Below, piece by piece: positions 1,751 through 35,993 of a DNA stretch of 64,000 nt. Both the position numbers and the translations under genes were made by a program. The notes beneath the pieces are model-generated. The model searched no databases, was not told the DNA's origin, and saw nothing but the letters and a program-made list of their open reading frames with translations. The stretch comes from Anolis carolinensis (Eukaryota): NCBI RefSeq assembly GCF_035594765.1, contig NC_085841.1, positions 316,395,402 to 316,459,401 on the forward strand, given 5' to 3'. Within the stretch, counting starts at the first letter, position 1, and every line of letters starts with the position of its first letter.

Positions 1751-3498
1751 AGAGTCATAGAGTCATAGAATAGTAGAGTTGGAAGAGACCTCATGGGCCA
1801 TCCAGTCCAACCCCCTGCCAAGAAGCAGGAAATCGCATTCATAGCACCCCTGACAGATGGCCATCCAGCCTCTGTTTAAAAGCCTCCAAAGAAGGAGCCT
1901 CCACCACAGTCCGGGGCAGAGAGTTCCACTGCCGAACAGCCCTCACTGTGAGGAAGTTCTTCCTAATGTTCAGGTGGAATCTCCTTTCCTGTAGTTTGAA
2001 GCCATTGTTCCGTGTCCTAGTCTGCAGGGCAGCAGAAAACAAGCTTGCTCCCTCCTCCCTATGACTTCCCCTCACATATTTGTACATGGCTCTCATGTCT
2101 CCTCTCAGCCTTCTCTTCTGCAGGCTAAACATGCCCAGTTCTTTAAGCCGCTCCTCATAGGGCTTGTTCTCCAGACCTTTGATCATTTTAGTCGCCCTCC
2201 TCTGGACGCTTTCCAGCTTGTCAACATCTCCCTTCAACTGTGGTGCCCAGAATTGGACACAGTATTCCAGGTGTGGTCTGACCAAGGCAGAATAGAGGGG
2301 GAGCATGACTTCCCTGGATCTAGACGCTATTCCCCTCTTGATGCAGGCCAGAATCCCGTTGGCTTTCTTAGCAGCCGCATCACATTGCTGGCTCATGTTT
2401 AACTTGTCGTCCACGAGGACTCCAAGATCTTTTTCACATGTACTGCTGTCTAGCCAGGTGTCCCCCATTCTGTATCTTTGCATTCCATTTTTTCTGCCGA
2501 AGTGAAGTATCTTGCATTTGTCCCTGTTGAACTTCATTTTGTTAGTTTCGGCCCATCTCTCTAGTCTGTCAAGATCGTTTTGAATTCTGCTCCTGTCTTC
2601 TGGAGTGTTGGCTATCCCTCCCAGTTTGGTGTCGTCTGCAAACTTGATGATCGTGCCTTCTAACCCTTCGTCTAAGTCATTAATAAAGATGTTGAACAGA
2701 ACTGGGCCCAGGACGGAGCCCTGCGGCACTCCACTCGTGACTTCTTTCCAAGATGAGGACGACGCATTGGTGAGCACCCTTTGGGTTCGTTCGCTTAGCC
2801 AATTACAGATCCACCTAACTGTAGTTTTGTCTAGCCCACATTTTACTAGTTTGTTTGCCAGAAGGTCGTGGGGGACTTTGTCGAAGGCCTTACTGAAATC
2901 TAGGTATGCTACATCCACGGCATTCCCTATATCGACCCAACTCGTAACTCTGTCGAGAAAAGAGATCAGATTAGTCTGGCATGACTTGTTTTTGGTAAAT
3001 CCGTGTTGACTATTAGCAATGACTGCATCTGTTTCTAAGTGTTTGCAGACCACTTCCTTAATGATCTTTTCCAGAATCTTGCCTGGTATCGATGTGAGAC
3101 TGACCGGACGGTAATTGTTTGGGTCGTTCTTTTTTCCCTTCTTGAAGATAGGGACCACATTCGCCCTCCTCCAATCTGCTGGGACTTCTCCCGTTCTCCA
3201 AGAACTCTCAAATATGATCGCCAGTGGTTCTGAAATAACTTCCGCTAGTTCCTTCAGTACTCTTGGATGTAGTTGATCTGGCCCTGGCGACTTGAATTCA
3301 TTTAGAGCGGCCAGGTGTTCCTGGACAACTTGTTTCCCTATTTGGGGTTGGATTTCCCCAAATCGTTCGTCCATTTCATGTTGCTGAGGTTGAAGATGGC
3401 TTTCTTTTTGTGAGAAGACCGAGGCAAAGAAGGCATTAAGCAGTTCTGCCTTTTCCCTGTCCCCTGTCGCCATCACCCCATCTTCTCCTCGCATCTTC
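1751..3498 (-). mobile_element. 5'-truncated young CR1 LINE
   Basis: Uninterrupted CR1-type RT ORF; CR1 3' UTR with 8-mer microsatellite tail (plus strand agagtcat agagtcat agaatagt); candidate 8-bp TSD TACTTTAT at 1743-1750 and 3499-3506. Confidence 0.95.
1839..3494 (-). CDS. CR1 ORF2 C-terminal part (reverse transcriptase domain; endonuclease lost by 5' truncation)
   Basis: 551 aa with [48 protein letters not shown] and a CR1-type C terminus; no stops; start ATG lies at the truncation junction, so probably not expressed. Confidence 0.9.
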
Positions 3499-8664: not shown

Positions 8665-10519
8665 GTAAATATTCCTATTCATTTAAATATATTTTTTAAA
8701 ACACTCTTCCTTTCAAAATGGTATAATTCTGTTATGTATTGCATGTTTCCCATCTGGTATATGTATACATTTGTGAGCCACAAAAAAAGCTCATCATTCA
8801 GAATTATGTGTCCAAGGGCATCCAACAGTGATACTGCGTGGAAGAGGTCCAAACAGAAAATGCAGATCCCAAGTGCCATTCTTTTGTTCGTTACTAGCAA
8901 AAAGTGTTCCTTATATGCTTACATTTAGGTTATTCCACATTTTAAGTTAGATGTAGTCTGCAGTTTTTGACCATTTCTTGATTATAATTACATACTTCTA
9001 CTTTAACATCTTTCAAAACTGTATACCTGGACATCTCTCACACCTAGATTTATACACATATTCAACTGTATTCCATGGTGTCAACTCAAGAGTATCTTGT
9101 TGGATGAACGAGTGGATAGTACACTTTAATGTTTCGGTACAAGGCAAAATTTGAAATAGTATTTCAGTGCTATTCTATAAATTAGTGAAGGCAAACAGGA
9201 ATGAGGAACTTGTGACATTACTTGGATATACCTTTTTTGACCACTAGCCATGCTGGTTGAGGTAGATGAGAGTTGAGAGTCCAACAGTCATAAGCTAAAG
9301 GCCCCTTATGACTTATACATCTCATCAATTCTTAGGGAAAGGCATTTTCTACATTATCCACTAGAGGTCAGTTAAGCTTCTTTATTGTACTGTGAAGAAA
9401 ATAATTTAATTGTGTTCCCTACTTGTCAGTATATATGTCTATTAATGGCAAATATATTATATCTTAAAAGTACAGTTTAATAGTGATTGTCTCATCCTAT
9501 ATCTGGCTAGAAATGTTGTGTTGAAGTAACCTAAAGCTACTGTCTGAGATAAAGAATCCCTGCTACAGTACTTAAATGGAAATATTTAAAATTATTCAAT
9601 TATCTTTATTATGTTGAAAAAAGTTAGATATGTAAGTGCCTTTCTGCTCCTAATATCAGTAGGTCTAAATATGTTCAATAGAGTGAACCATCTGAATCAC
9701 TGGCACTTATATAAGTGTTGACTCACCAAGTTTCCATTGATCCAGGAGATTTACTCTGGTTAACAGAAGCAATTGTATATAGCCCTTAGTGAGCAGTTGG
9801 GTAGAATATAGCCTGAATCATTGTCTACATTTTGTTTCCTCAAGTACCAAAGTTACAAGTTAAACTTTTTAAAAGTTTAAATGTGAAAAATCAGATGAGA
9901 TGCCTAGAATATAGCTAAGGAAGTGAGGTTCTCAACATTTCTCTTTCATTTTGTGACCATGATTCTGTTCAGTTTTACGAAGGCAGTAACAATATTCCTG
10001 TTGCCCTTCCAGTCCCTCTATAGCAGGCAAGGACAAACTTTTTTGTCTTGGGGCCCCATTGTGGGCTTGGCCAAGAAGTCCAGGCCAGGATGGAGGGTGG
10101 CCGGTCAAGTGCTGGACGGGATGGGCCCAGAAAGGGAGGACCTGGGAGAGGGCGGGGCTGGAGGGGGGTGGAGCAGGGCTCGGGTCATCCTCGGGTTGTC
10201 CTCCTGGTGGCTCGCCCCATCCATGTGCCGGGAAGAAAACAAGACGTGCAGCGAGTGCCCCCCTGATCTTTAGGCTGTCGTCTCAGCATTATGCTGGGAG
10301 GAGGATGAGACAGGCGATGGCCAAAAGCACTCCGGAGGGCTCTTAGCCACGACATGTTCACACTGTCCTTATGCCAGGAAGAAGGCAAGACATGGGGTGG
10401 CAGAGAGAGCTCCAGAGGGCTCTCAGCTGCTGTGTGCCTTCCTCCCCCATCCTTTCTGCATAACGATGTGGCAGGCCTAGCATGAACCCTATACCCCTGG
10501 ATTTACTGAGCAGCCTCTG

Positions 10520-19765: not shown

Positions 19766-20509
19766 ACAGAAACATCAATTGCATATTGACTTTTGAGAAC
19801 GCTTTGAATTGCATATGGTGGCTGCACAACTCCAGGCATTCTTGGTAGATACTGATTTTCTGGATCCGGCGCAGTCTGGCTTCAGGCCAGGGCATGGTAC
19901 CGAGACAGCCTTGGTCGCCTTAGTCGATGATCTACGCCGGGAACTGGAGAGGGGAAGTGTGTCCCTGCTGGTTCTGCTGGACCTCTCAGCGGCCTTCGAT
20001 ACTGTCGATCACAGTATCCTTCTGGGATGCCTTGCCAGGATGGGGCTCGGGGGTACTGTTCTGCAGTGGCTCCGGTCCTTTCTGGAGGGTTGTTCCCAGA
20101 TGGTGTCATTGGGGGACGCCTGCTCGATCCCACAACTGTTGTCTTGTGGGGTCCCGCAGGGCTCTGTATTGTCTCCCATGTTGTTTAACATCTACATGAA
20201 GCCTTTGGGAGAGATCATCCGGAGTTTTGGGGTGCGGTGTCATCTGTACGCAGATGATGTCCAGCTCTGTCACTCCTTCCCACCTGTCACTAAGGAGGCT
20301 GTTCAAGTCCTGAACCGATGTCTGGCCGCTGTGTCAGACTGGATGAGGGCCAACAAATTGAATCCAGACAAGACAGAGGTCCTCCTGGTCAGTCGTAAGG
20401 CTGAACAGGGAATAGGGTTACAGCCTGCGTTGGACGGGGTCGCACTCCCCCTGAAGACACAGGTTCGCAGTCTGGGGGTTCTCCTGGACTCATCGCTGAG
20501 CCTGGAGCC

Positions 20510-21474
20510 TGTCACGACCCAGGCTGCAGAGCACCAATAACCATACACAGAGGCCAGAATCTATCTAATATCTTTATTAAGGAAATAAGTAAAGGCAATA
20601 AAAATAAGTGTAGAATATAGTTCAGAAGATGTCCTTTCAGGAAAGGTCAAATATAGTCCAGGAAAACAATGTCCAATATGAAATAGTAAGGTCCAAAGTT
20701 GTAATCCAGTAACCGAAACACTCACTTTGCCAAGCAGAGTGAGGGGAGATGACAAGGTCCTTTAATCCATGAAACTTAGGCAAGGCAAGGAAATAGCTTG
20801 ATTCTTGGTACACAAAGCTTGATTCAAGGCAACAAGGAACGAGGAACAGGGACAAGATCCGTGGTAAATACTTGGCAAGGTCCGGGAAGCAAGGCAAGGT
20901 CCTGGAAGGCAAGGCTGAGTCCTAGGAAACAAGGCAAGGTCCGTGAAGCAAACAAGGCTGGGAACGTGAACGTAGGCTTGGAAACAGGAACGAGGCTTGG
21001 AAACTGGAGTAGCGCTGTCCACACACAACCTACTCCAGTAGCTGACGAATTGACTCCGCAAGATTCCTTCGGGGCAAGGAACCTAAATAGGGTCTCGTTT
21101 TCCCACCAAAGAACACTTCTCTGGGGAATCAGAACCGAAAGTCAATCTCTGTGTCCAGATGCATGACTCCCTAGAATTTCTCATGGAAGCAGTCTTAATC
21201 AGCTGAATGCCTGGCTGCGATTCTCAGGCTTCTGCGATTAGCCTGCTGAACTCCTTTTTGTTGTTGATAATAACTACGGCGAGAAAATGGGGGAGATTCT
21301 GACTCAGGGCTTGTTTGGCAGATTTCTGGAAGGCAAACCTCTTGCAGGTGCAAGGGCTCCAATTCAGGCTGGGAAAGTTCCAATTCTGGCTGAAATGGTG
21401 GAAAACCCAAGTTTTCCTCTTCATCTGTCACAACAGCGTTAGGAACGGGACTACATGGCCCATGAGTCATCACA
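20510..21474 (-). mobile_element. Solo LTR of the Gypsy/chromovirus family at 29599-35988 (diverged subfamily)
   Basis: 965 bp, TG...CA ends, 5-bp TSD GAGCC (20505-20509, 21475-21479), colinear with the LTRs of the full element. Confidence 0.95.
21195..21470 (-). other. LTR (U3)-encoded 91-aa reading frame, homolog of the Pol C-terminal tail
   Basis: MTHGPCSP...RRSLRIAARHSAD*; same length and 60/91 identical (manual count) to 30277-30552. Confidence 0.8.
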
Positions 21475-29160: not shown

Positions 29161-29598
29161 TATTGTTGTTGTTGTTGTTGTTGTATGACACAGCAAACAA
29201 GATAGATATGCTGGATTTCATATCACAAAATCACAAGTCGAACACTTCCCAAGTGTCTAGGACTTTGTGATGTATTTTCGGATGATGCGTGCAGATCCCA
29301 GTAGGGTGGCCTTTTGCAGTTGGCAGATCGTAATTTTGTCAATGTCTATTGTTTCCAAATGCCGACTGAGATCTTTTGGCATGGCACCCAATGTGCCCAT
29401 CACCACCGGGACCACCTGCACTGGTTTCTGCCAGAGTCTTTGCAGTTCAATCTTGAGGTCCTGATCGCGGCTGAGTTTTTCCTGTTGTTTTTCATCAATG
29501 CAACTGTCACCTGGGATGGCAACATCAATGAACCAAACCTTTTTCTTTCCCACAACTGTGATGTCTGGTGTGTCGGGTTCCAGAACTTTGTCAGTCTG
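29161..29598 (-). mobile_element. R4/Dong-clade LINE, 3' part (restriction-like endonuclease and 3' UTR)
   Basis: TPDITVV...FIDVAIPGD...EKLS (PD..D motif), QLQKATLLGSARIIRKY*; (CAA)n tail at ~29163-29183. Confidence 0.85.
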
Positions 29599-30556
29599 TG
29601 TCACGACCCAGGCTGCAGAGCACCAATAACCATACACAGAGGCCAGATTCTATCTAATATCTTTATTAAGGAAATATATAAAGTTAATAAAAGCAAGTGT
29701 ATGAAATAGTCCAGAAGTAGACCTTTCAGGGAAGGTCAAAATTAGTCCAAGAAAACAATGTCCAATATGAAATATTAAGGTCCAAAGTTGTAATCCAATA
29801 ACCGAAACACTCACTTTGCCAGGCAAAGTGAGGGGAGATGACAAGGTCCTTTAGTCCATGAACTTGAGCAAGGCTAGGAAATAACTTGAAACAAGGCTTG
29901 ATACAAGGCAACAAGGAACGAGGAGCGAGAACAAGGTCCGTGGAATTACTTGGCAAAACCCGGGAAACAAGGCAAGGCTGAGTCCTGGAAAACAAGGCAA
30001 GGTCCGTGGAGGTAAACAAGGCTGGAAACGGGAGCGAAGGCTTGGAATCAGGAACAAGGCTTGAAACAGGAACGAGGCTTGGAAACGGAGCGCGCTGTCC
30101 ACACACAACTTACTCCAGTAGCTGACGAATTGACTCCGCAAGATCCCTTTGTGGGTAAAACACCTAAATAGGGTCTAGTTTTCCCACCAAAGAACAGTTC
30201 ACTGGGGAACCAGAAACGAAAGCTAATCTCTGAGTCCAGATGCATGACTCCTTAAAGTTTCTCATGGAAAACAGGCTTAATCAGCTAAATTCTTAGCAGC
30301 TATCCTAGCACTCCTGCGAGAGGCCGCTTGAACTCCTCTCTGTTGTTTACAAAACTCGTGGCGAGAAAACACAGGAGATTTAGGCTCAGGGCTTGTTTGA
30401 CAGACTTCTGGAAGACAAATCTCTTGCAGGTGCAAGGTTCCCAGATCTGGCTGGGAAGGTTCCAATTCTGACTGAGACGGTGAAAAACCCAAGTTCTCCT
30501 CTTCATCTGGGACTACAGTGCCATGAATGGGATTACATGGCCCATGACTCATCACA
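29599..30556 (-). repeat. 3' LTR
   Basis: TG...CA ends; same as 35031-35988 except 30479 G vs 35911 A; minus-strand AATAAA at 29662-29667. Confidence 0.95.
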
Positions 30557-33500
30557 CTATCCCCCTCCTCAAGCCCCCTCTCAAACTGGGACTCTCTCCC
30601 CGAGGCGCGAGGCCGCGGCTTGGCGGGATAGGTCTGATGGAAGCGGCGGGTTAGATCAGGAGCATGGACTGTGGAAGCGTCTTCCCAAGAGCGTTCCTCG
30701 GGGCCAAAACCCACCCAGTCAATGAGATATTGTAGGCGGCGGCGGTGAAAGCGAGAATCCAAAATGTCCTGAACCTCAAACTCCTCCTCTCCATCTACCC
30801 AAACAGGAGGGGGGGCCGGCCGGTCTGTATCAGGGCGCGCACCATCCGCCGGAAGGAGTAGGGAACGATGGAACACTGGATGAATGCGCATTGAGCGCGG
30901 AAGTTGGAGTTTGAAAGTCACGGGGTTAAGTTGCGCCACCACTGGATAGGGGCCAATGAAACGGGCATCTAACTTCCGGCAAGGGCGATGGGAGGGCAAA
31001 AAGCGAGTGGACAGAAGAACCCGGTCTCCTACCTTGATTTCGGGGCCCGGCTGGCGATGTTTGTCCGCGTGACGTTTATAGTCCTCCTTGGCTTGGTCTA
31101 GTTGCTGGAGCAAGAGTTGTTGCACCGCTGTGAGTTCCTGCAGCCAGTCCTCTGCTGCGGGAACTTCTGAGGTTTCAATGACAGGAGGAAAGAAACGTGG
31201 ATGGAAGCCGTAGTTTGCAAAGAACGGGGTTTCTTTAGTAGAAGCCTGGACCCCATTGTTGTAGGCAAACTCTGACAACGATAACAGGGAAGCCCAATTG
31301 TCCTGTTGGTAGTTCACATAACAGCGAAGGTATTGTTCCAAAGTGGCATTGGTGCGCTCAGTTTGCCCATCTGTTTGGGGATGATGAGCCGAAGATAAAC
31401 GAGAGTCTATGCCCAATAGTTTTTGTAGTGCTTTCCAGAAACGAGAGGTGAATTGGGACCCACGGTCTGTGACCAAACTCTTGGGCAATCCATGCAATCT
31501 GAAAACATGTTGGAGGAATAGATCTGCAGTCTCTTTGGCCGTGGGAAGGCCTTCACAGGGAATGAAATGGGCTAACTTGGTGAAAAGGTCCACCACCACT
31601 AGGATTGTGGTGAATCCACAGGAAGGTGGTAGATCAGTGATAAAATCCGCAGAGATTATTTCCCATGGGTGGGATGGGGTAGGGAGGGGATGCAGAAGCC
31701 CTGAGGGCTTCTCCCTTCTTGTCTTGGAGCGCTGGCATACTGGGCAGGTGTTGACATATTTTTCCACATCCTTGCGGATCTTGGGCCACCAGAAATCTCT
31801 TAGGATCAAATGCATAGTTTTGAATAGTCCGAAATGCCCTGCTGGCTTGCAGTCATGACACAGACGAAGTGCCTTTTCTCTGCCCGGTCCTGGGGGGATG
31901 TAAACATGATTTCTATAGCAAAGTAGCCCATCCTTAAGCGAAAAGGGAAAATGTAGTCCTTGGCGAAGTTGGTCCTGTGCCCAGGCATCTACTTGCTGGC
32001 TGGCCCTGATTTCCTGAGCACAAAGGGGCCCTGGAGTAGAGGGAGTTGATTCAATGGGAGTGGATTTGGTGTTTCCCACTGTGAGCGTGGCAAAGTTCTC
32101 GGGTTGTAGCAGCTGAGATTCAAAGGTCTCCTTGCGCCCTGCAGCGTATTCCGGTTTTCGTGACAGAGCATCTGCTTGCTTGGTCTGGGCTGGGGTTACA
32201 TAATGAATTTGGAAGTTAAAACGTTCAAAGAATAAAGCCCAGCGTTGTTGCCTCTGATTTAGCTTGCGGGCAGTTCTTAGATGCTCTAGATTCCGATGAT
32301 CAGTATGGACTTCAATGGGAAATTTGGCCCCTTCTAACCAATGTCTCCAAGTTTCAAAGGCTGCCTTTATGGCCAATAGTTCCTTTTCCCAAATGGTGTA
32401 GTTTCTCTCTGGTGCGGTCAATTGACGGGAATAAAAGGCACAAGGATGAAGATGATCTCCCACCGGTTGTAGGAGTACAGCCCCAATTGCCACATCGGAG
32501 GCGTCCGCCTGCACGACAAAAAGGGTTTCAGGATCTGGATGCTGAAGGATTGGCTGGGACGTGAATAATTTCTTTAGTTGCTGGAACCCTTTCTCTGCTT
32601 GATCTGTCCAGCGGAAGGGCTGTTTCCCACGGATGCAGCTGGTGATTGGGTCAGACCAGCGGGCAAAGTCTGGAATGAACTTGCGATAGTAGTTCGCGAA
32701 CCCCAAGAATCGTTGCACCTCTTTCTTGTTGGTGGGCGCCCGCCATTCCAATACTGCTGAAACCTTTGCCGGGTCCATGGAGAGCCCTAGTGGCGAGACG
32801 CGGTACCCCAGGAAATCTACCTCTTGTAGATCAAAAGCACATTTTTCCAGCTTGGCATAAAGTCCATGATCTCGCAATCGTTGTAACACCATTCTGACGT
32901 GGTTCTCATGTTCTGATTGTGATCTAGAAAACACCAAAAAATCGTCCAGGTAGATGATCAAGAACCGATCTAGATAATCCTGAAAGATGTCATTGACAAA
33001 ATGTTGGAACGTTGCGGGAGCTCCACATAATCCATAATTCATAACTCGGGACTCGAATAATCCGAATTTAGTCTGGAAGGCGGTCTTCCACTCGTCCCCT
33101 TCTCTGATGCGAACTAGATTATACGCCCCCCGAAGATCCAGCTTGGTGTAGACCTTGGCTCCTCGAAGTCGGTCTAGTAGGTCCGAGATTAAGGGCAGGG
33201 GATAGCTGTTCCGCTTAGTGATATTGTTCAATGCTCTATAGTCCACCACCAAGCGTAATTCCCCGGATTTCTTTTTCACAAACATCACTGGGGAAGCGGC
33301 TGGGGATTGAGAGGGTCTGATGAATCCCTTGCGAAGGTTTGACTCTATAAACTCCTTGAGAGCTTCTTGCTCCGGTTCAGTCAGGGAGTAGAGATGTCCT
33401 CGCGGGATCGGGGCCCCCTCCACCAAGTCAATGGCACAGTCATAAGGTCTATGTGGGGGTAATCTCTCGGCCTCTTTTTCATTGAATACATCCCAATATT

Positions 33501-34023
33501 CTGAGTACTTCTTGGGCAAGGTGATAATGGGTTCAGTGTCTGTGGCATGGCAGACCTTGGCTACAAGGCAATGGTTTTGGCAATATTTTGAAGCAAACTG
33601 CAGTTCTCTGTTGGACCAGGAGATGCTTGGGTCGTGAAGTGTCAGCCATGGAATTCCCAAAATCACAGGGAAATGGGGAACCTCGGTAACAAAGAAGGAA
33701 ATCTCTTCCATATGTTCCCTTATCCACATTCTGGTGGGTTCCGACCACTGGCTTACGGGACCCGTCTTGAGGGGGCGGCCATCGATGGCTTGCACCACAC
33801 GGGCATTCTTGAAGTCATGGTATTGTAATCCCAGAGAGTCGGCATACTCTCTATCAATGAAATTGTTTGTGGCTCCTGAGTCTATCATGGCATGGACAAT
33901 GACTGGCCCCTTTTTTGCTGACCACAAGGTGACCACTAGAAGAAATAGGACCCCGGTTGGCGGCTCTTGAGTGGGTTTTTTGACCGGGTTGGCGAGCCTC
34001 TCTACGCCCGGTCGCTGGCTTCC
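30277..34023 (-). CDS. pol: Pol polyprotein (protease, RT, RNase H, integrase, GPY/F, chromodomain, LTR-encoded tail), -1 frame relative to gag
   Basis: DSGA protease, YLDD RT, DASD/EKELLAI/TDH/ADALSR RNase H, H-H-C-C zinc finger, D-D-E (ADFI, TDRGSQF, TERTN), GPY, chromodomain FEVQDILDSR...YLIDWVGF; frame open from the TGA at 34048 to the TAA at 30277 (ORF track 30277-33936). Confidence 0.95.
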   Translation of the reverse strand, partial: GSQRPGVERLANPVKKPTQEPPTGVLFLLVVTLWSAKKGPVIVHAMIDSGATNNFIDREYADSLGLQYHDFKNARVVQAIDGRPLKTGPVSQWSEPTRMWIREHMEEISFFVTEVPHFPVILGIPWLTLHDPSISWSNRELQFASKYCQNHCLVAKVCHATDTEPIITLPKKYSEYWDVFNEKEAERLPPHRPYDCAIDLVEGAPIPRGHLYSLTEPEQEALKEFIESNLRKGFIRPSQSPAASPVMFVKKKSGELRLVVDYRALNNITKRNSYPLPLISDLLDRLRGAKVYTKLDLRGAYNLVRIREGDEWKTAFQTKFGLFESRVMNYGLCGAPATFQHFVNDIFQDYLDRFLIIYLDDFLVFSRSQSEHENHVRMVLQRLRDHGLYAKLEKCAFDLQEVDFLGYRVSPLGLSMDPAKVSAVLEWRAPTNKKEVQRFLGFANYYRKFIPDFARWSDPITSCIRGKQPFRWTDQAEKGFQQLKKLFTSQPILQHPDPETLFVVQADASDVAIGAVLLQPVGDHLHPCAFYSRQLTAPERNYTIWEKELLAIKAAFETWRHWLEGAKFPIEVHTDHRNLEHLRTARKLNQRQQRWALFFERFNFQIHYVTPAQTKQADALSRKPEYAAGRKETFESQLLQPENFATLTVGNTKSTPIESTPSTPGPLCAQEIRASQQVDAWAQDQLRQGLHFPFSLKDGLLCYRNHVYIPPGPGREKALRLCHDCKPAGHFGLFKTMHLILRDFWWPKIRKDVEKYVNTCPVCQRSKTRREKPSGLLHPLPTPSHPWEIISADFITDLPPSCGFTTILVVVDLFTKLAHFIPCEGLPTAKETADLFLQHVFRLHGLPKSLVTDRGSQFTSRFWKALQKLLGIDSRLSSAHHPQTDGQTERTNATLEQYLRCYVNYQQDNWASLLSLSEFAYNNGVQASTKETPFFANYGFHPRFFPPVIETSEVPAAEDWLQELTAVQQLLLQQLDQAKEDYKRHADKHRQPGPEIKVGDRVLLSTRFLPSHRPCRKLDARFIGPYPVVAQLNPVTFKLQLPRSMRIHPVFHRSLLLPADGARPDTDRPAPPPVWVDGEEEFEVQDILDSRFHRRRLQYLIDWVGFGPEERSWEDASTVHAPDLTRRFHQTYPAKPRPRASGRESQFERGLEEGDSVMSHGPCNPIHGTVVPDEEENLGFSPSQSELEPSQPDLGTLHLQEICLPEVCQTSPEPKSPVFSRHEFCKQQRGVQAASRRSARIAAKNLAD
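30557..30582 (-). promoter_or_regulatory. Polypurine tract
   Basis: Minus strand GAGAGGGGGCTTGAGGAGGGGGATAG immediately before the 3' LTR. Confidence 0.85.
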
Positions 34024-34026
34024 CCC
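33962..34026 (-). promoter_or_regulatory. Candidate -1 ribosomal frameshift signal (G_GGG_GAA, 6-nt spacer, pseudoknot)
   Basis: Falls in the only ~45-nt gag/pol overlap; stem GACCGGG/CCCGGTC; loop GGCTC complementary to downstream GAGCC. Confidence 0.65.
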
Positions 34027-34988
34027 GCCGGCTGTGCGCCAGCCGCCTCAGATGCCTTCGTCTCCGTGGAGGACGCCGCCGCCAGACGGGCGGCGGGCTT
34101 CCCTTTGGCTGGGCACTCTCTGGCGAAGTGGCCCCCGTTCCCGCAGTACCAACAGAGATTTAGGCGTTGGCGGCGGGCCTTCTCGGCGGCATCTAACCTG
34201 GGACGCACATTGCCCAACTGCATCGGCACCTCCTCGCTCCCCCTGGGGTATGGGGCTGGTGGTGGGGGTCTCCATACTGGACGCGGCTGGACGCTGGTGG
34301 GAGCGGGAGGTTTCACCCCAGCTCTACCGCTCTGGCCTCGGACCCATTGTTTTCTGTTGGCAAGCATGACTTCAGCTCGTAAACATTGATCAATGAGTGC
34401 TTCAAGAGAGTGGGGGGGATCCACCTTGGAAATTTCCTCCAACATCTCGATGTTGAGACCCTCCCGAAATTGTCCTCTGAGGGCTATATCATTCCATCCG
34501 GTGCTGTGGGCCAGCACTCGGAACTCGGCTATGTACTGGGACAAGGGTCTGTCCCCCTGAGAGAGGCGCCGGAGTTTATGGCCGGCTGCCTCCAAATTGT
34601 CTTCGATCCCCCAAGTCGCCTTAATGTGATCCAAGAAGTGTTGCGCTGATCTTAGGTGTGGGGAAACTTGGTCGAACAGTGCCGTCGCCCAGTTGGCCGC
34701 TGGCCCATCTAAAAGGCTGTAGATCCACGCCACTTTGATGTCTTCTTGGGGAAACTCGGCATTGCGGGCCTCTAGATAAGCCTGGCATTGGCGACGGAAA
34801 ACATGAACCTTAGAAGCTTCTCCAGAAAACTTGGTTGGCAACGCCAGGGCCGGGAGACGGATTCCGCGTTCCTTCAATCCCTTTATTTCTCCCTCCTGCG
34901 CATTGAGCTTATCACGGATGCGATCCACTTCCTCCTTGTCGATGGTGTAGCTGAGTGGCTGGCCTCCCGGTCCGGCTCCGGTAGACAT
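34002..34988 (-). CDS. gag: Gag (coiled coil, capsid, CCHC zinc knuckle), PEG10/Sushi-like
   Basis: 328 aa; LPTKFSG...FRRQCQAYL, LSQYIAEFRVLA...GWND, PMQLG...RRQRLNLCWYCGNGGHFARECP. Confidence 0.95.
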   Translation of the reverse strand: MSTGAGPGGQPLSYTIDKEEVDRIRDKLNAQEGEIKGLKERGIRLPALALPTKFSGEASKVHVFRRQCQAYLEARNAEFPQEDIKVAWIYSLLDGPAANWATALFDQVSPHLRSAQHFLDHIKATWGIEDNLEAAGHKLRRLSQGDRPLSQYIAEFRVLAHSTGWNDIALRGQFREGLNIEMLEEISKVDPPHSLEALIDQCLRAEVMLANRKQWVRGQSGRAGVKPPAPTSVQPRPVWRPPPPAPYPRGSEEVPMQLGNVRPRLDAAEKARRQRLNLCWYCGNGGHFARECPAKGKPAARLAAASSTETKASEAAGAQPAGEASDRA

Positions 34989-35018
34989 TCTGGCCTAGGT
35001 TAATTGGTGCTTAGGGTG

Positions 35019-35030
35019 GCGGAGTCAAAC
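35019..35030 (-). promoter_or_regulatory. Non-tRNA (self-priming) primer-binding site
   Basis: GTTTGACTCCGC follows the 5' LTR with no TGG; TTGACTCCGC is complementary to GCGGAGTCAA at 35571-35562 inside the LTR. Confidence 0.75.
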
Positions 35031-35988
35031 TGTCACGACCCAGGCTGCAGAGCACCAATAACCATACACAGAGGCCAGATTCTATCTAATATCTTTATTA
35101 AGGAAATATATAAAGTTAATAAAAGCAAGTGTATGAAATAGTCCAGAAGTAGACCTTTCAGGGAAGGTCAAAATTAGTCCAAGAAAACAATGTCCAATAT
35201 GAAATATTAAGGTCCAAAGTTGTAATCCAATAACCGAAACACTCACTTTGCCAGGCAAAGTGAGGGGAGATGACAAGGTCCTTTAGTCCATGAACTTGAG
35301 CAAGGCTAGGAAATAACTTGAAACAAGGCTTGATACAAGGCAACAAGGAACGAGGAGCGAGAACAAGGTCCGTGGAATTACTTGGCAAAACCCGGGAAAC
35401 AAGGCAAGGCTGAGTCCTGGAAAACAAGGCAAGGTCCGTGGAGGTAAACAAGGCTGGAAACGGGAGCGAAGGCTTGGAATCAGGAACAAGGCTTGAAACA
35501 GGAACGAGGCTTGGAAACGGAGCGCGCTGTCCACACACAACTTACTCCAGTAGCTGACGAATTGACTCCGCAAGATCCCTTTGTGGGTAAAACACCTAAA
35601 TAGGGTCTAGTTTTCCCACCAAAGAACAGTTCACTGGGGAACCAGAAACGAAAGCTAATCTCTGAGTCCAGATGCATGACTCCTTAAAGTTTCTCATGGA
35701 AAACAGGCTTAATCAGCTAAATTCTTAGCAGCTATCCTAGCACTCCTGCGAGAGGCCGCTTGAACTCCTCTCTGTTGTTTACAAAACTCGTGGCGAGAAA
35801 ACACAGGAGATTTAGGCTCAGGGCTTGTTTGACAGACTTCTGGAAGACAAATCTCTTGCAGGTGCAAGGTTCCCAGATCTGGCTGGGAAGGTTCCAATTC
35901 TGACTGAGACAGTGAAAAACCCAAGTTCTCCTCTTCATCTGGGACTACAGTGCCATGAATGGGATTACATGGCCCATGACTCATCACA
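35031..35988 (-). repeat. 5' LTR
   Basis: 958 bp, TG...CA ends, copy of 29599-30556. Confidence 0.95.
35597..35602 (-). promoter_or_regulatory. TATA-like box of the LTR promoter
   Basis: TATTTA starting 31 nt upstream of the predicted +1 (35571); also present in the 3' LTR and the solo LTR. Confidence 0.6.
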
Positions 35989-35993
35989 GTCTG

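What the first reader, a model, noticed from the sequence alone, without database searches (positions are those of the whole stretch)
30277..30556. Integrase tail encoded inside the LTR, under protein-level selection, ending in an HMGN-like RRSARIAAK motif
Seen: pol has no stop after the chromodomain; it reads through the PPT and about 92 codons into the U3 of the 3' LTR, giving an acidic, Pro/Ser-rich linker followed by SRRSARIAAKNLAD*. The diverged solo LTR keeps the same frame (21470-21195): same ATG at LTR position 5, same 91-aa length, no indels or stops, 60/91 identical, while the rest of the LTR has indels (965 vs 958 bp). Within R-R-S-x-R-I-A-A, six of the seven conserved codons differ synonymously (CGC AGG AGT GCT AGG ATA GCT GCT vs CGC AGA AGC CTG AGA ATC GCA GCC). 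That pattern is expected from selection on the peptide, not on the DNA. Established: RRSARLSAK is the core by which HMGN proteins bind the nucleosome H2A-H2B acidic patch, and arginine-anchor motifs tether foamy virus Gag and KSHV LANA to chromatin. Inference: this integrase has a two-part chromatin reader (chromodomain plus an LTR-encoded acidic-patch anchor on a flexible linker), so U3 acts as both promoter region and coding sequence. I do not know of a description of this for vertebrate chromoviruses, but cannot search.
Basis: partly seen in the sequence, partly recalled or inferred. Interest (0 to 1): 0.9.

Follow-up and report, generated by a model that had tools for sequence, protein, structure and literature searches.

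The report
LTR-encoded integrase tail, HMGN-like motif
A young lizard (green anole) Gypsy-type retrotransposon makes an integrase whose last 92 amino acids are encoded inside its own LTR, and this selected tail ends in the same short arginine peptide that HMGN, Dsup and yeast Dot5 use to grip nucleosomes; whether it binds nucleosomes is untested.

Summary
An apparently intact chromovirus lies on the minus strand (29599-35988; 958-bp LTRs, 1 mismatch; TSD CAGAC). Its pol frame (30277-33936) has no stop after the chromodomain. It crosses the polypurine tract and runs 92 codons into the 3' LTR, ending SRRSARIAAKNLAD*.

The solo LTR (20510-21474) keeps the frame. So do three other Anolis carolinensis copies I fetched and 17 database proteins. 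Across five lineages ML dN/dS is 0.36 (omega=1 rejected, 2ΔlnL 33), against 0.03-0.13 for core pol. In R-R-S-x-R-I-A-A the seven fixed residues carry at least 10 synonymous and no replacement changes. Lineage-level indels are all in-frame.

The tail coding sequence sits in U3, upstream of a TATA-like box and a Tf1/sushi-type self-primer.

Reading pol into the LTR is not new. Plant CRM chromoviruses encode their CR motif there, and a carp relative here reads 27 codons in. The long tail with this motif appeared only in anole proteins.

The motif matches Dot5 RRSARIAT (7/8) and HMGN RRSARLSA (6/8), both shown to bind the acidic patch. Binding by this tail is inferred, and there is no HMGN family homology.

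This scan has flagged the same feature many times elsewhere in this genome. I class it as a new variant of a known kind.

The parts
29599..35988 (-). Complete chromovirus (Ty3/gypsy) copy, 6390 bp, flanked by the 5-bp target-site duplication CAGAC (35989-35993 and 29594-29598)
   Evidence: two 958-bp direct repeats, TG...CA ends, TSD read from the alignment flanks
35031..35988 (-). 5' LTR. Positions 35709-35988 are a silent copy of the tail ORF, with one difference from the 3' copy (P to L)
34002..34988 (-). gag, 328 aa, with capsid and CCHC knuckle
   Evidence: PF03732, PF16297, PF00098
30277..33936 (-). pol ORF, 1219 aa: PR, RT, RNase H, integrase (H2C2, core, SH3), chromodomain, tail
30634..30780 (-). 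Chromodomain (pol residues 1053-1101), with aromatic residues F/W/F at the cage positions
   Evidence: PF00385, E 1.2e-8; confident fold. The cage residues were read by eye against the HP1 pattern, which I recalled from memory
30557..30582 (-). Polypurine tract, translated as part of pol (...ERGLEEGD-S)
   Evidence: The same junction GGGGGATAG|TGTGATG is present in L002, L003 and L004
29599..30556 (-). 3' LTR
30277..30556 (-). LTR-encoded integrase tail: 92 codons plus TAA, acidic and Pro/Ser/Gln-rich (linker pI 4.8) with a basic end (pI 11.7)
30292..30318 (-). RRSARIAAK, the HMGN-like motif
   Evidence: R, S, R, I, A, A are invariant and the second R nearly so in 19 proteins. The five DNA lineages show only synonymous changes here
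30484..30507 (-). DEEENLGF, a second conserved peptide in the tail, function unknown
30535..30555 (-). First seven tail codons (VMSHGPC), almost invariant at the nucleotide level as well, probably because of a DNA constraint at the LTR end (att)
   Evidence: no synonymous variation in 5 of 7 codons
30165..30170 (-). TATTTA, a TATA-like box at LTR position 387 (also at 35597-35602 in the 5' LTR)
35562..35571 (-). GCGGAGTCAA at LTR positions 418-427, the putative 5' end of the transcript and self-primer
   Evidence: complementary to the PBS, 31 nt from the first base of the TATA-like box (25 nt past its end), conserved in L003 and L004
35019..35028 (-). Primer-binding site TTGACTCCGC, starting 3 nt after the 5' LTR
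29662..29667 (-). AATAAA polyadenylation signal (LTR position 890)
20510..21474 (-). Diverged solo LTR (82% identical, TSD GGCTC). Tail ORF copy at 21195-21474, motif RRSLRIAAR at 21210-21236

Best explanation
The stretch is the 3' end of pol in an apparently intact, very young chromovirus of Anolis carolinensis.

Shown: the genomic RNA carries U3 at its 3' end, and pol has no stop before it. Translation therefore crosses the polypurine tract and adds a 92-residue tail to the integrase behind its chromodomain. The tail evolves about ten times faster than core pol but is under purifying selection. It behaves like a disordered acidic linker carrying short conserved peptides. The strongest of these is R-R-S-x-R-I-A-A-[KR], four residues from the C-terminus. 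The copies of this frame in 5' LTRs and solo LTRs are silent by-products, because reverse transcription copies U3 to both ends.

Inferred: the motif acts as an arginine anchor in the H2A-H2B acidic patch, as the near-identical motifs of HMGN, Dsup and Dot5 do. The integrase would then hold a nucleosome at two points: the chromodomain on methylated H3K9 and the tail on the disc face. This would tether the intasome to chromatin and bias where it inserts.

My odds: the tail is translated and selected, 0.95; the motif binds the acidic patch, about 0.5.
For: Anatomy.

Frame kept in every copy that reaches it: 17 of 17 database proteins and 4 of 4 genomic elements read from pol through the PPT.

Selection: ML omega 0.36, lnL -1045.70 against -1062.33 with omega fixed at 1. 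Pairwise omega is 0.12-0.55 for the tail and 0.03-0.13 for PR, RT, RH, IN and chromodomain. Changes by codon position are 50/39/73.

Motif: at least 10 synonymous and 0 replacement changes in the 7 fixed codons. Roughly 0.28 of random changes there would be synonymous, so the chance of 10 out of 10 is about 3e-6, and still under about 3e-3 after allowing for window choice and transition bias.

Indels: the three lineage-level indels (21-nt deletion, 6-nt and 15-nt insertions) are in-frame. Copy-specific damage is not: a 20-nt deletion, a 1-nt deletion and a stop.

U3 location: TATA-like box at LTR 387 and self-primer at 418, against the ORF at 2-280.

Disorder: pLDDT under 50 for residues 153-228 of the 260-residue model.

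Motif function elsewhere: HMGN2 RRSAR and Dsup RRSSRLTS seen on the acidic patch by cryo-EM (PMC12487698). Dot5 RRSARIAT needs R6, R7 and R10 and an intact acidic patch (PMC13347269). Position 4 varies both here (A/L) and among the known binders (A/S).

Local chance check: in the six-frame translation of the window the pattern occurs only in the three LTR copies.
Against: No binding test of any kind was possible. The resemblance covers 8-9 residues. Pfam HMG14_17 and a PDB sequence search gave nothing.

AlphaFold2 puts the last 27 residues in a helix at pLDDT 64-71, whereas HMGN and Dsup bind in an extended form.

The motif was found by readers looking for such patterns in a very large scan, so its mere presence is weak evidence. 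Only its conservation counts.

A basic C-terminal peptide could serve nuclear import, nucleic-acid binding or another partner. The acidic linker could mask it.

The tail was found only in A. carolinensis proteins, so its age and breadth are unknown.

Expression of this copy is not shown. All runs laid were contigs.
Confidence: 0.5

Rival explanations
1. The tail is a genuine, selected part of the integrase, but the basic end does something other than bind the acidic patch. Possibilities are a nuclear-import signal, cDNA or RNA binding, a phospho-regulated site, or docking on another host chromatin factor, as the MLV integrase tail docks on BET proteins or the Ty1 tail on Pol III.
For: Selection is shown, but the partner is not. 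The motif has 4 basic residues in 9. AlphaFold2 predicts a helix rather than an extended peptide. Integrase C-terminal tails that bind quite different partners are well documented (papers listed).
Against: The exact conservation pattern (R1, R2, S3, R5, I6 fixed, position 4 free) matches the functional residues of HMGN, Dsup and Dot5. It does not fit a classical K-K/R-x-K/R import signal. The conserved Ser, Ile, Ala, Ala are not explained by a need for charge alone.
Confidence: 0.35
2. The open frame is an independent LTR-encoded small protein, translated from the ATG at LTR position 5 in solo or 5' LTRs or in read-through transcripts.
For: An ATG is present at position 5 in all anole LTR copies. 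Gene models such as P0092 splice the LTR frame as a terminal exon.
Against: The frame is continuous with pol, with no stop, in every element examined. The ATG is part of the nucleotide-invariant LTR terminus TGTGATG. The carp relative reads into an LTR that starts TGTCAGG with no ATG. U3 of a 5' LTR lies upstream of the inferred start of transcription. Older copies decay by frameshifts and stops.
Confidence: 0.05
3. The frame is kept by chance or by DNA-level constraint on U3 (enhancer or integrase-binding end), not by selection on a peptide.
For: For the single pair in the window the signal is weak: differences by position are 19/18/24 and the chance of no stop is 0.145. The first seven codons really are constrained at the DNA level.
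Against: Omega=1 is rejected across five lineages. There is a third-position excess, indels are in-frame, and the motif varies at the DNA level while staying fixed at the protein level. This LTR segment is in fact the most diverged part of the LTR at the DNA level (78% against 85-94%).
Confidence: 0.03

Closest known systems
Plant CRM-clade chromoviruses, group A (centromeric retrotransposons; Neumann et al. 2011, PMC3059260; Weber et al. 2013, PMC3605345)
   Same: The gag-pol frame runs through the PPT into the 3' LTR, and the LTR-coded end of the integrase is the putative targeting part. U3 therefore both codes and regulates.
   Different: In CRM the LTR-coded CR motif replaces the chromodomain. 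Here a typical chromodomain lies upstream of the PPT and the LTR adds a further disordered tail. The hosts differ (plants against a lizard). The partner of the CR motif is unknown and no HMGN-like motif is reported for it.
HMGN nucleosome-binding motif and its look-alikes (HMGN RRSARLSA; tardigrade Dsup RRSSRLTS; yeast Dot5 RRSARIAT; PMC12487698, PMC13347269, PMC6773438)
   Same: RRSARIAA shares 6/8 residues with HMGN and 7/8 with Dot5. The three arginines and the serine that contact the acidic patch are invariant here, and the one variable position (4) also varies among the known binders.
   Different: There is no family homology outside the motif (Pfam negative). It sits at the C-terminus of a retrotransposon integrase. 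Binding is untested.
Viral acidic-patch tethers: KSHV LANA and prototype foamy virus Gag chromatin-binding sequence (review PMC9040877)
   Same: A short arginine-anchor peptide in a mobile or viral protein, used to hold a genome or pre-integration complex on chromatin. In PFV it shapes the choice of integration site.
   Different: Those peptides have different sequences and sit in Gag or an episome-maintenance protein, not in integrase, and none is LTR-encoded.
Integrase C-terminal tethering peptides (MLV IN tail with BET ET domain, PMC4027182; Ty1 IN C-terminus with Pol III AC40, PMC10050235 and PMC7459421)
   Same: A disordered C-terminal integrase extension carrying a short motif that decides targeting.
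   Different: The partners are specific host proteins rather than the nucleosome surface, and the tails are not encoded in the LTR.
Fish chromoviruses of the Tf1/sushi group (for example the Cirrhinus mrigala copy L001)
   Same: Same domain order, a homologous PPT/LTR junction (GGGGGTAG|TGT, read as G-S-V), and pol reading into the LTR.
   Different: Only about 27 LTR codons. The tail ends in SPEF/Y, with a PRGRGRPRRR stretch before the PPT, and has no RRSxRIAA.

Membership tests
Chromovirus (Ty3/gypsy, Metaviridae) | LTRs with TG...CA ends and a target-site duplication; gag, then PR-RT-RH-IN order | tested here: met
Chromovirus (Ty3/gypsy, Metaviridae) | Chromodomain at the integrase C-terminus | tested here: met
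   PF00385, E 1.2e-8, residues 1053-1101; confident fold
Tf1/sushi group | Self-priming: PBS complementary to the 5' end of the element's own transcript instead of a tRNA | tested here: met
   A 10-nt complement lies 31 nt from the first base of a TATA-like box (25 nt past its end) and is conserved in three subfamilies. The transcription start itself is inferred.
HMGN-like nucleosome-binding motif (functional class) | Core R-R-S-x-R-[LI]-x-x with the three arginines | tested here: met
   RRSARIAA and RRSLRIAA, compared with the motif strings quoted
HMGN-like nucleosome-binding motif (functional class) | Lies in an intrinsically disordered region | tested here: inconclusive
   The linker has pLDDT under 50, but the motif itself lies in a predicted helix at pLDDT 64-71
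HMGN-like nucleosome-binding motif (functional class) | Arginine-dependent binding to the H2A-H2B acidic patch | not testable with these tools
   No histone sequences could be supplied to the complex predictor under its rules; a biochemical test is needed
HMGN protein family (Pfam HMG14_17) | Profile-level homology to the HMGN nucleosome-binding domain | tested here: not met
   No Pfam hit at E up to 10 for three tail queries; no PDB hit
CRM-type LTR-encoded integrase targeting domain | The pol frame crosses the PPT and ends inside the 3' LTR | tested here: met
   definition
CRM-type LTR-encoded integrase targeting domain | The LTR-coded part is the CR motif and takes the place of the chromodomain | tested here: not met
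   The chromodomain lies upstream of the PPT. Similarity to the CR motif sequence was not tested, as no CR sequence was at hand.
LEDGF/HRP2 TND-interacting motif | Acidic linker followed by FxGF with both phenylalanines (PMC9987994) | tested here: not met
   The tail has DEEENLGF. The first Phe position is Asn in all 19 sequences.
Classical monopartite NLS | K-K/R-x-K/R | tested here: inconclusive
   By eye, RRSAR does not fit strictly. No NLS predictor was available.

The most novel reading that the evidence does not exclude
A vertebrate retrotransposon integrase is a bivalent nucleosome reader. Its chromodomain reads methylated H3K9, and a U3-encoded HMGN-type arginine anchor binds the H2A-H2B acidic patch. 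Together they tether the intasome to heterochromatic nucleosomes. Because the anchor is written in U3, targeting peptide and promoter are inherited, swapped by recombination and evolve as one module. Related elements carry other short peptides in the same position (SPEF/Y in fish), so LTR-encoded integrase tails may be a general, exchangeable slot for targeting peptides in chromoviruses.
Probability: 0.4. Interest if true: 0.8.

Novelty: new variant of a known kind. Interest (0 to 1): 0.6.

Why it matters
How LTR retrotransposons of vertebrates choose insertion sites is largely unknown. The known tethers come from yeast elements and retroviruses. If the tail binds the acidic patch, it would be the first HMGN-type anchor found on an integrase, and an example of two-point nucleosome recognition by a mobile element.

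It would also give a short, easily tested peptide from a family that is abundant and apparently recently active in the green anole. It adds a natural member to the small set of proven HMGN-like motifs (HMGN, Dsup, Dot5), whose authors predicted further undiscovered members.

Independently of the mechanism, the case shows that many "ORFs under selection in solo LTRs" in this genome are silent copies of an integrase tail. It also shows that several NCBI and Ensembl gene models absorb them.

Tried and rejected
- Pfam on three tail pieces at E up to 10: nothing, so no HMGN family claim.
- phmmer of the last 26 residues against PDB chains: nothing, as the query is too short.
- Profile search of the tail against 1.84 billion representatives: only A. 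carolinensis fragments and low-complexity noise. This gives no evidence for or against other species, because transposon proteins are usually masked in annotations.
- The look-up of encoding contigs for UniRef-only proteins (P0001, P0006, P0093, P0096): not on record. P0092 was on record, but its gene range was too long to return DNA. DNA for other lineages came from NCBI chimeric gene models instead.
- Read laying on four runs: thousands of contig pieces, showing an abundant family. The variant table was cut to the 40 best. The listed tail variants fall 0/6/5 by codon position, against 3/4/12 in the integrase and chromodomain part. This is consistent with a weakly constrained linker but too truncated to use, and all runs were contigs, so nothing can be said on expression.
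- DEEENLGF as a LEDGF/TND motif: rejected, because the first Phe of FxGF is missing.
- AT_hook Pfam on fish tails: no hit.
- Complex prediction was not run. It accepts only session sequences or prokaryotic and phage references, so H2A and H2B could not be supplied without typing them.
- Capture of the motif from a host HMGN gene: not testable here. The flanks look unrelated to the HMGN2 fragment quoted.
The stop in L002 was masked as a gap in the codon analyses.

Full report
**1. What is there**

The finding lies on the minus strand. Two 958-bp direct repeats (35031-35988 and 29599-30556) differ at one base. They start TGTGATGA, end GTGACA, and are flanked by the duplication CAGAC. Between them lie gag (34002-34988, capsid plus CCHC) and a 1219-codon pol frame (30277-33936). 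Pol carries protease, RT, RNase H, integrase zinc finger, integrase core, SH3 and a chromodomain at residues 1053-1101.

After the chromodomain there is no stop. The frame is read across the polypurine tract (30557-82, GAGAGGGGGCTTGAGGAGGGGGATAG). It enters the LTR at 30556 and continues for 92 codons to TAA at 30277-30279, ending ...QQRGVQAASRRSARIAAKNLAD.

A third LTR, 82% identical and 965 bp long with its own duplication GGCTC, is a solo LTR at 20510-21474. It keeps the frame, the length and the stop. The other two frames of all three copies are full of stops.

**2. Host and family**

The tail finds only Anolis carolinensis proteins, named "Gypsy retrotransposon integrase-like protein 1", in 90% clusters of 94 and 366 members. 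Contigs of public runs lay on the stretch by the thousand, so the family is abundant.

**3. Is the frame selected?**

For the pair in the window the evidence is only modest:
- dN/dS is 0.39-0.76 depending on the method.
- Differences fall 19/18/24 by codon position.
- Random substitution would leave the frame open 14.5% of the time.
- Random substitution would reach the observed 61 identical residues 1.6% of the time.

I therefore fetched DNA for three more anole copies through chimeric NCBI gene models: L002, L003 and L004. With the window's two types this gives five lineages:
- Pairwise NG86 omega is 0.12-0.55 in every comparison.
- A codon model gives omega 0.36 and kappa 2.06 (lnL -1045.70). 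Fixing omega at 1 gives -1062.33 at best. 2ΔlnL is 33.3 with one degree of freedom.
- Minimum changes by codon position are 50/39/73.
- The same elements give omega 0.03-0.13 in protease-RT, RNase H, integrase core and SH3-chromodomain.

So the tail evolves about ten times faster in protein sequence than core pol but is clearly not neutral. That is the pattern of a disordered linker carrying short functional peptides.

Indels tell the same story. The three indels that separate lineages are 21, 6 and 15 nt, all in-frame. Damage private to single old copies consists of a 20-nt deletion, a 1-nt deletion and a stop. All 17 database proteins that reach the junction read on into the tail.

**4. Where the constraint sits**

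The first seven codons (VMxHGPC) are nearly invariant at the nucleotide level. This is as expected for the LTR end that integrase must recognise.

The motif behaves in the opposite way. The residues R, R, S, R, I, A, A are fixed, while their codons are CGC; AGG/AGA/CGA; AGT/AGC; AGG/AGA/CGG; ATA/ATC/ATT; GCT/GCA; GCT/GCC/GCA. That is at least 10 synonymous and no replacement changes. Only position 4 varies (A or L), and the following residue is K or R. About 28% of random changes in these codons would be synonymous, so 10 out of 10 has a chance near 3e-6. It stays small after allowing for the choice of window and for transition bias.

In 19 protein tails R83, S85, R87, I88, A89 and A90 are invariant and R84 nearly so. 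A second conserved peptide is DEEEN[LM]GF.

**5. U3**

The sequence TTGACTCCGC, starting three bases after the 5' LTR, is complementary to GCGGAGTCAA at LTR positions 418-427. That site starts 31 nt from the first base of a TATTTA at 387. The arrangement is kept in L003 and L004. This is the self-priming layout of the Tf1/sushi group and places the start of transcription near position 415. AATAAA is at 890. The tail frame (LTR 2-280) therefore lies wholly in U3. The start site is inferred, not measured.

**6. Structure**

AlphaFold2 on the last 260 residues, with 21 aligned sequences, gives confident SH3 and chromodomain folds. It gives pLDDT under 50 for residues 153-228, and a helix at pLDDT 64-71 over the last 27 residues. 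The linker has pI 4.8 and the last 16 residues pI 11.7.

**7. Comparison with what is known**

[quoted passage not shown] It is also established for some Bingo elements (PMC3059260, PMC3605345).

Among relatives found with the SH3-chromodomain-tail region, fish chromoviruses show ...PRGRGRPRRR...GGGGSV...SPEF ends. In the Cirrhinus mrigala copy L001 the LTR starts at 9618, after GGAGGAGGGGGTAG, and pol stops at 9699, which is 27 codons inside the LTR. The overlap is thus shared by fish and lizard members. The long tail with RRSxRIAA was seen only in the anole.

The motif strings come from papers, not memory:
- HMGN: RRSARLSA.
- Dsup: RRSSRLTS. Cryo-EM shows R363 and R367 buried in the acidic patch, with HMGN2 R26 as the arginine anchor (PMC12487698).
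- Yeast Dot5: RRSARIAT. [quoted passage not shown]
- Arg-to-Glu changes in Dsup were made to test binding (PMC6773438).

The anole motif equals Dot5 at 7 of 8 positions. It conserves exactly the residues that matter and varies where the known binders vary.

My literature searches found no report of such a motif on a retrotransposon integrase. The known viral acidic-patch tethers are LANA and foamy virus Gag (PMC9040877).

**8. Verdict**

The acidic-patch mechanism is the best available explanation but remains an inference. I put it near 0.5. The main rival is another role for the basic end.

It is not a member of the HMGN family (Pfam negative). It is a new variant of two known things: LTR-encoded integrase targeting tails, and HMGN-like arginine-anchor motifs.

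**9. Earlier notes of this scan**

After reaching the reading above I searched the scan's notes. The same feature has been flagged many times on other pieces of this genome, and follow-up agents came to the same conclusion. These are not independent evidence.

One note on a different anole Gypsy family, with an LTR-encoded tail carrying a LEDGF-type motif, led me to test DEEENLGF against the FxGF rule. It fails that rule.

**10. Limits**

- Five DNA lineages are few.
- All reads data were contigs, so expression is not shown.
- No complex prediction was possible.
- A test that needs an engineered copy of the element is referred.

Noticed in passing
L001:9540-9699; proteins P0039, P0040, P0050, P0052, P0055, P0059, P0085: Fish chromovirus integrases carry a PRGRGRPRRR stretch after the chromodomain that resembles an AT-hook (Pfam AT_hook did not hit). 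Next comes poly-Gly, which is the translated PPT, and then an LTR-encoded tail that very often ends in S-P/E-E-F/Y. This may be another lineage-specific C-terminal peptide in the same slot.
   Followed up: partly
window 35019-35028 and 35562-35571 (also L003, L004): There is no tRNA-type TGG primer-binding site. Instead a 10-nt complement links the PBS to a site 31 nt from the start of a TATA-like box (25 nt past its end) in the LTR, which is the Tf1/sushi-type self-priming layout.
   Followed up: partly
window 19809-20540 (+) and 20510-21474 (-); proteins P0093, P0101: The solo LTR abuts and overlaps the end of a non-LTR reverse-transcriptase ORF. Two Ensembl/UniProt models likewise fuse a LINE RT or an L1 ORF1 to the start of such an LTR. 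That makes three cases of this LTR nested in LINEs, which may hint at insertion into repeats or may reflect ascertainment bias.
   Followed up: no
L003:2930-9270 compared with window 29599-35988: Internal pol is close to the window's element (dS 0.14-0.27), but its LTR and tail are of the solo-LTR type (tail dS 0.62, LTR 82% identical). LTR plus tail seem to be exchanged between subfamilies by recombination.
   Followed up: partly
L002:1227-9624: An element is followed by an LTR and then directly by a second internal region. The two elements share the middle LTR, in a tandem LTR-internal-LTR-internal arrangement. This copy is decayed (deletion in the chromodomain, stop in the tail).
   Followed up: no
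window 30484-30507 (-): DEEEN[LM]GF is conserved in all 19 tails, with synonymous variation at D, E and G. It resembles an acidic linker plus xGF but lacks the first Phe of the LEDGF-type FxGF. Its function is unknown.
   Followed up: partly
proteins P0004, P0005, P0092: Several NCBI gene models are chimeras that absorb ORFs of this retrotransposon or its LTR frame. Examples are those named pterin-4-alpha-carbinolamine dehydratase 2 isoform X1, KCNQ5 isoform X3 and LOC107983085 isoform X2. These look like annotation artefacts.
   Followed up: no
window 30015-30086 (-) and the matching part of the solo LTR: An 18-19-nt tandem repeat (AACAAGGCTTGGAAACAGG, about 3.8 copies) lies in the LTR downstream of the inferred transcription start. 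Most LTR length differences between copies fall in this CCTTG-rich region.
   Followed up: no
window 1839-3494 (-): A 551-aa ORF with an RVT_1 domain, which is another (non-LTR type) retroelement in the window.
   Followed up: no
window 33936-34004 (-): gag and pol are in different frames (offset 2) and the pol frame is closed just upstream of 33936. How pol is reached (frameshift or other) was not worked out.
   Followed up: no
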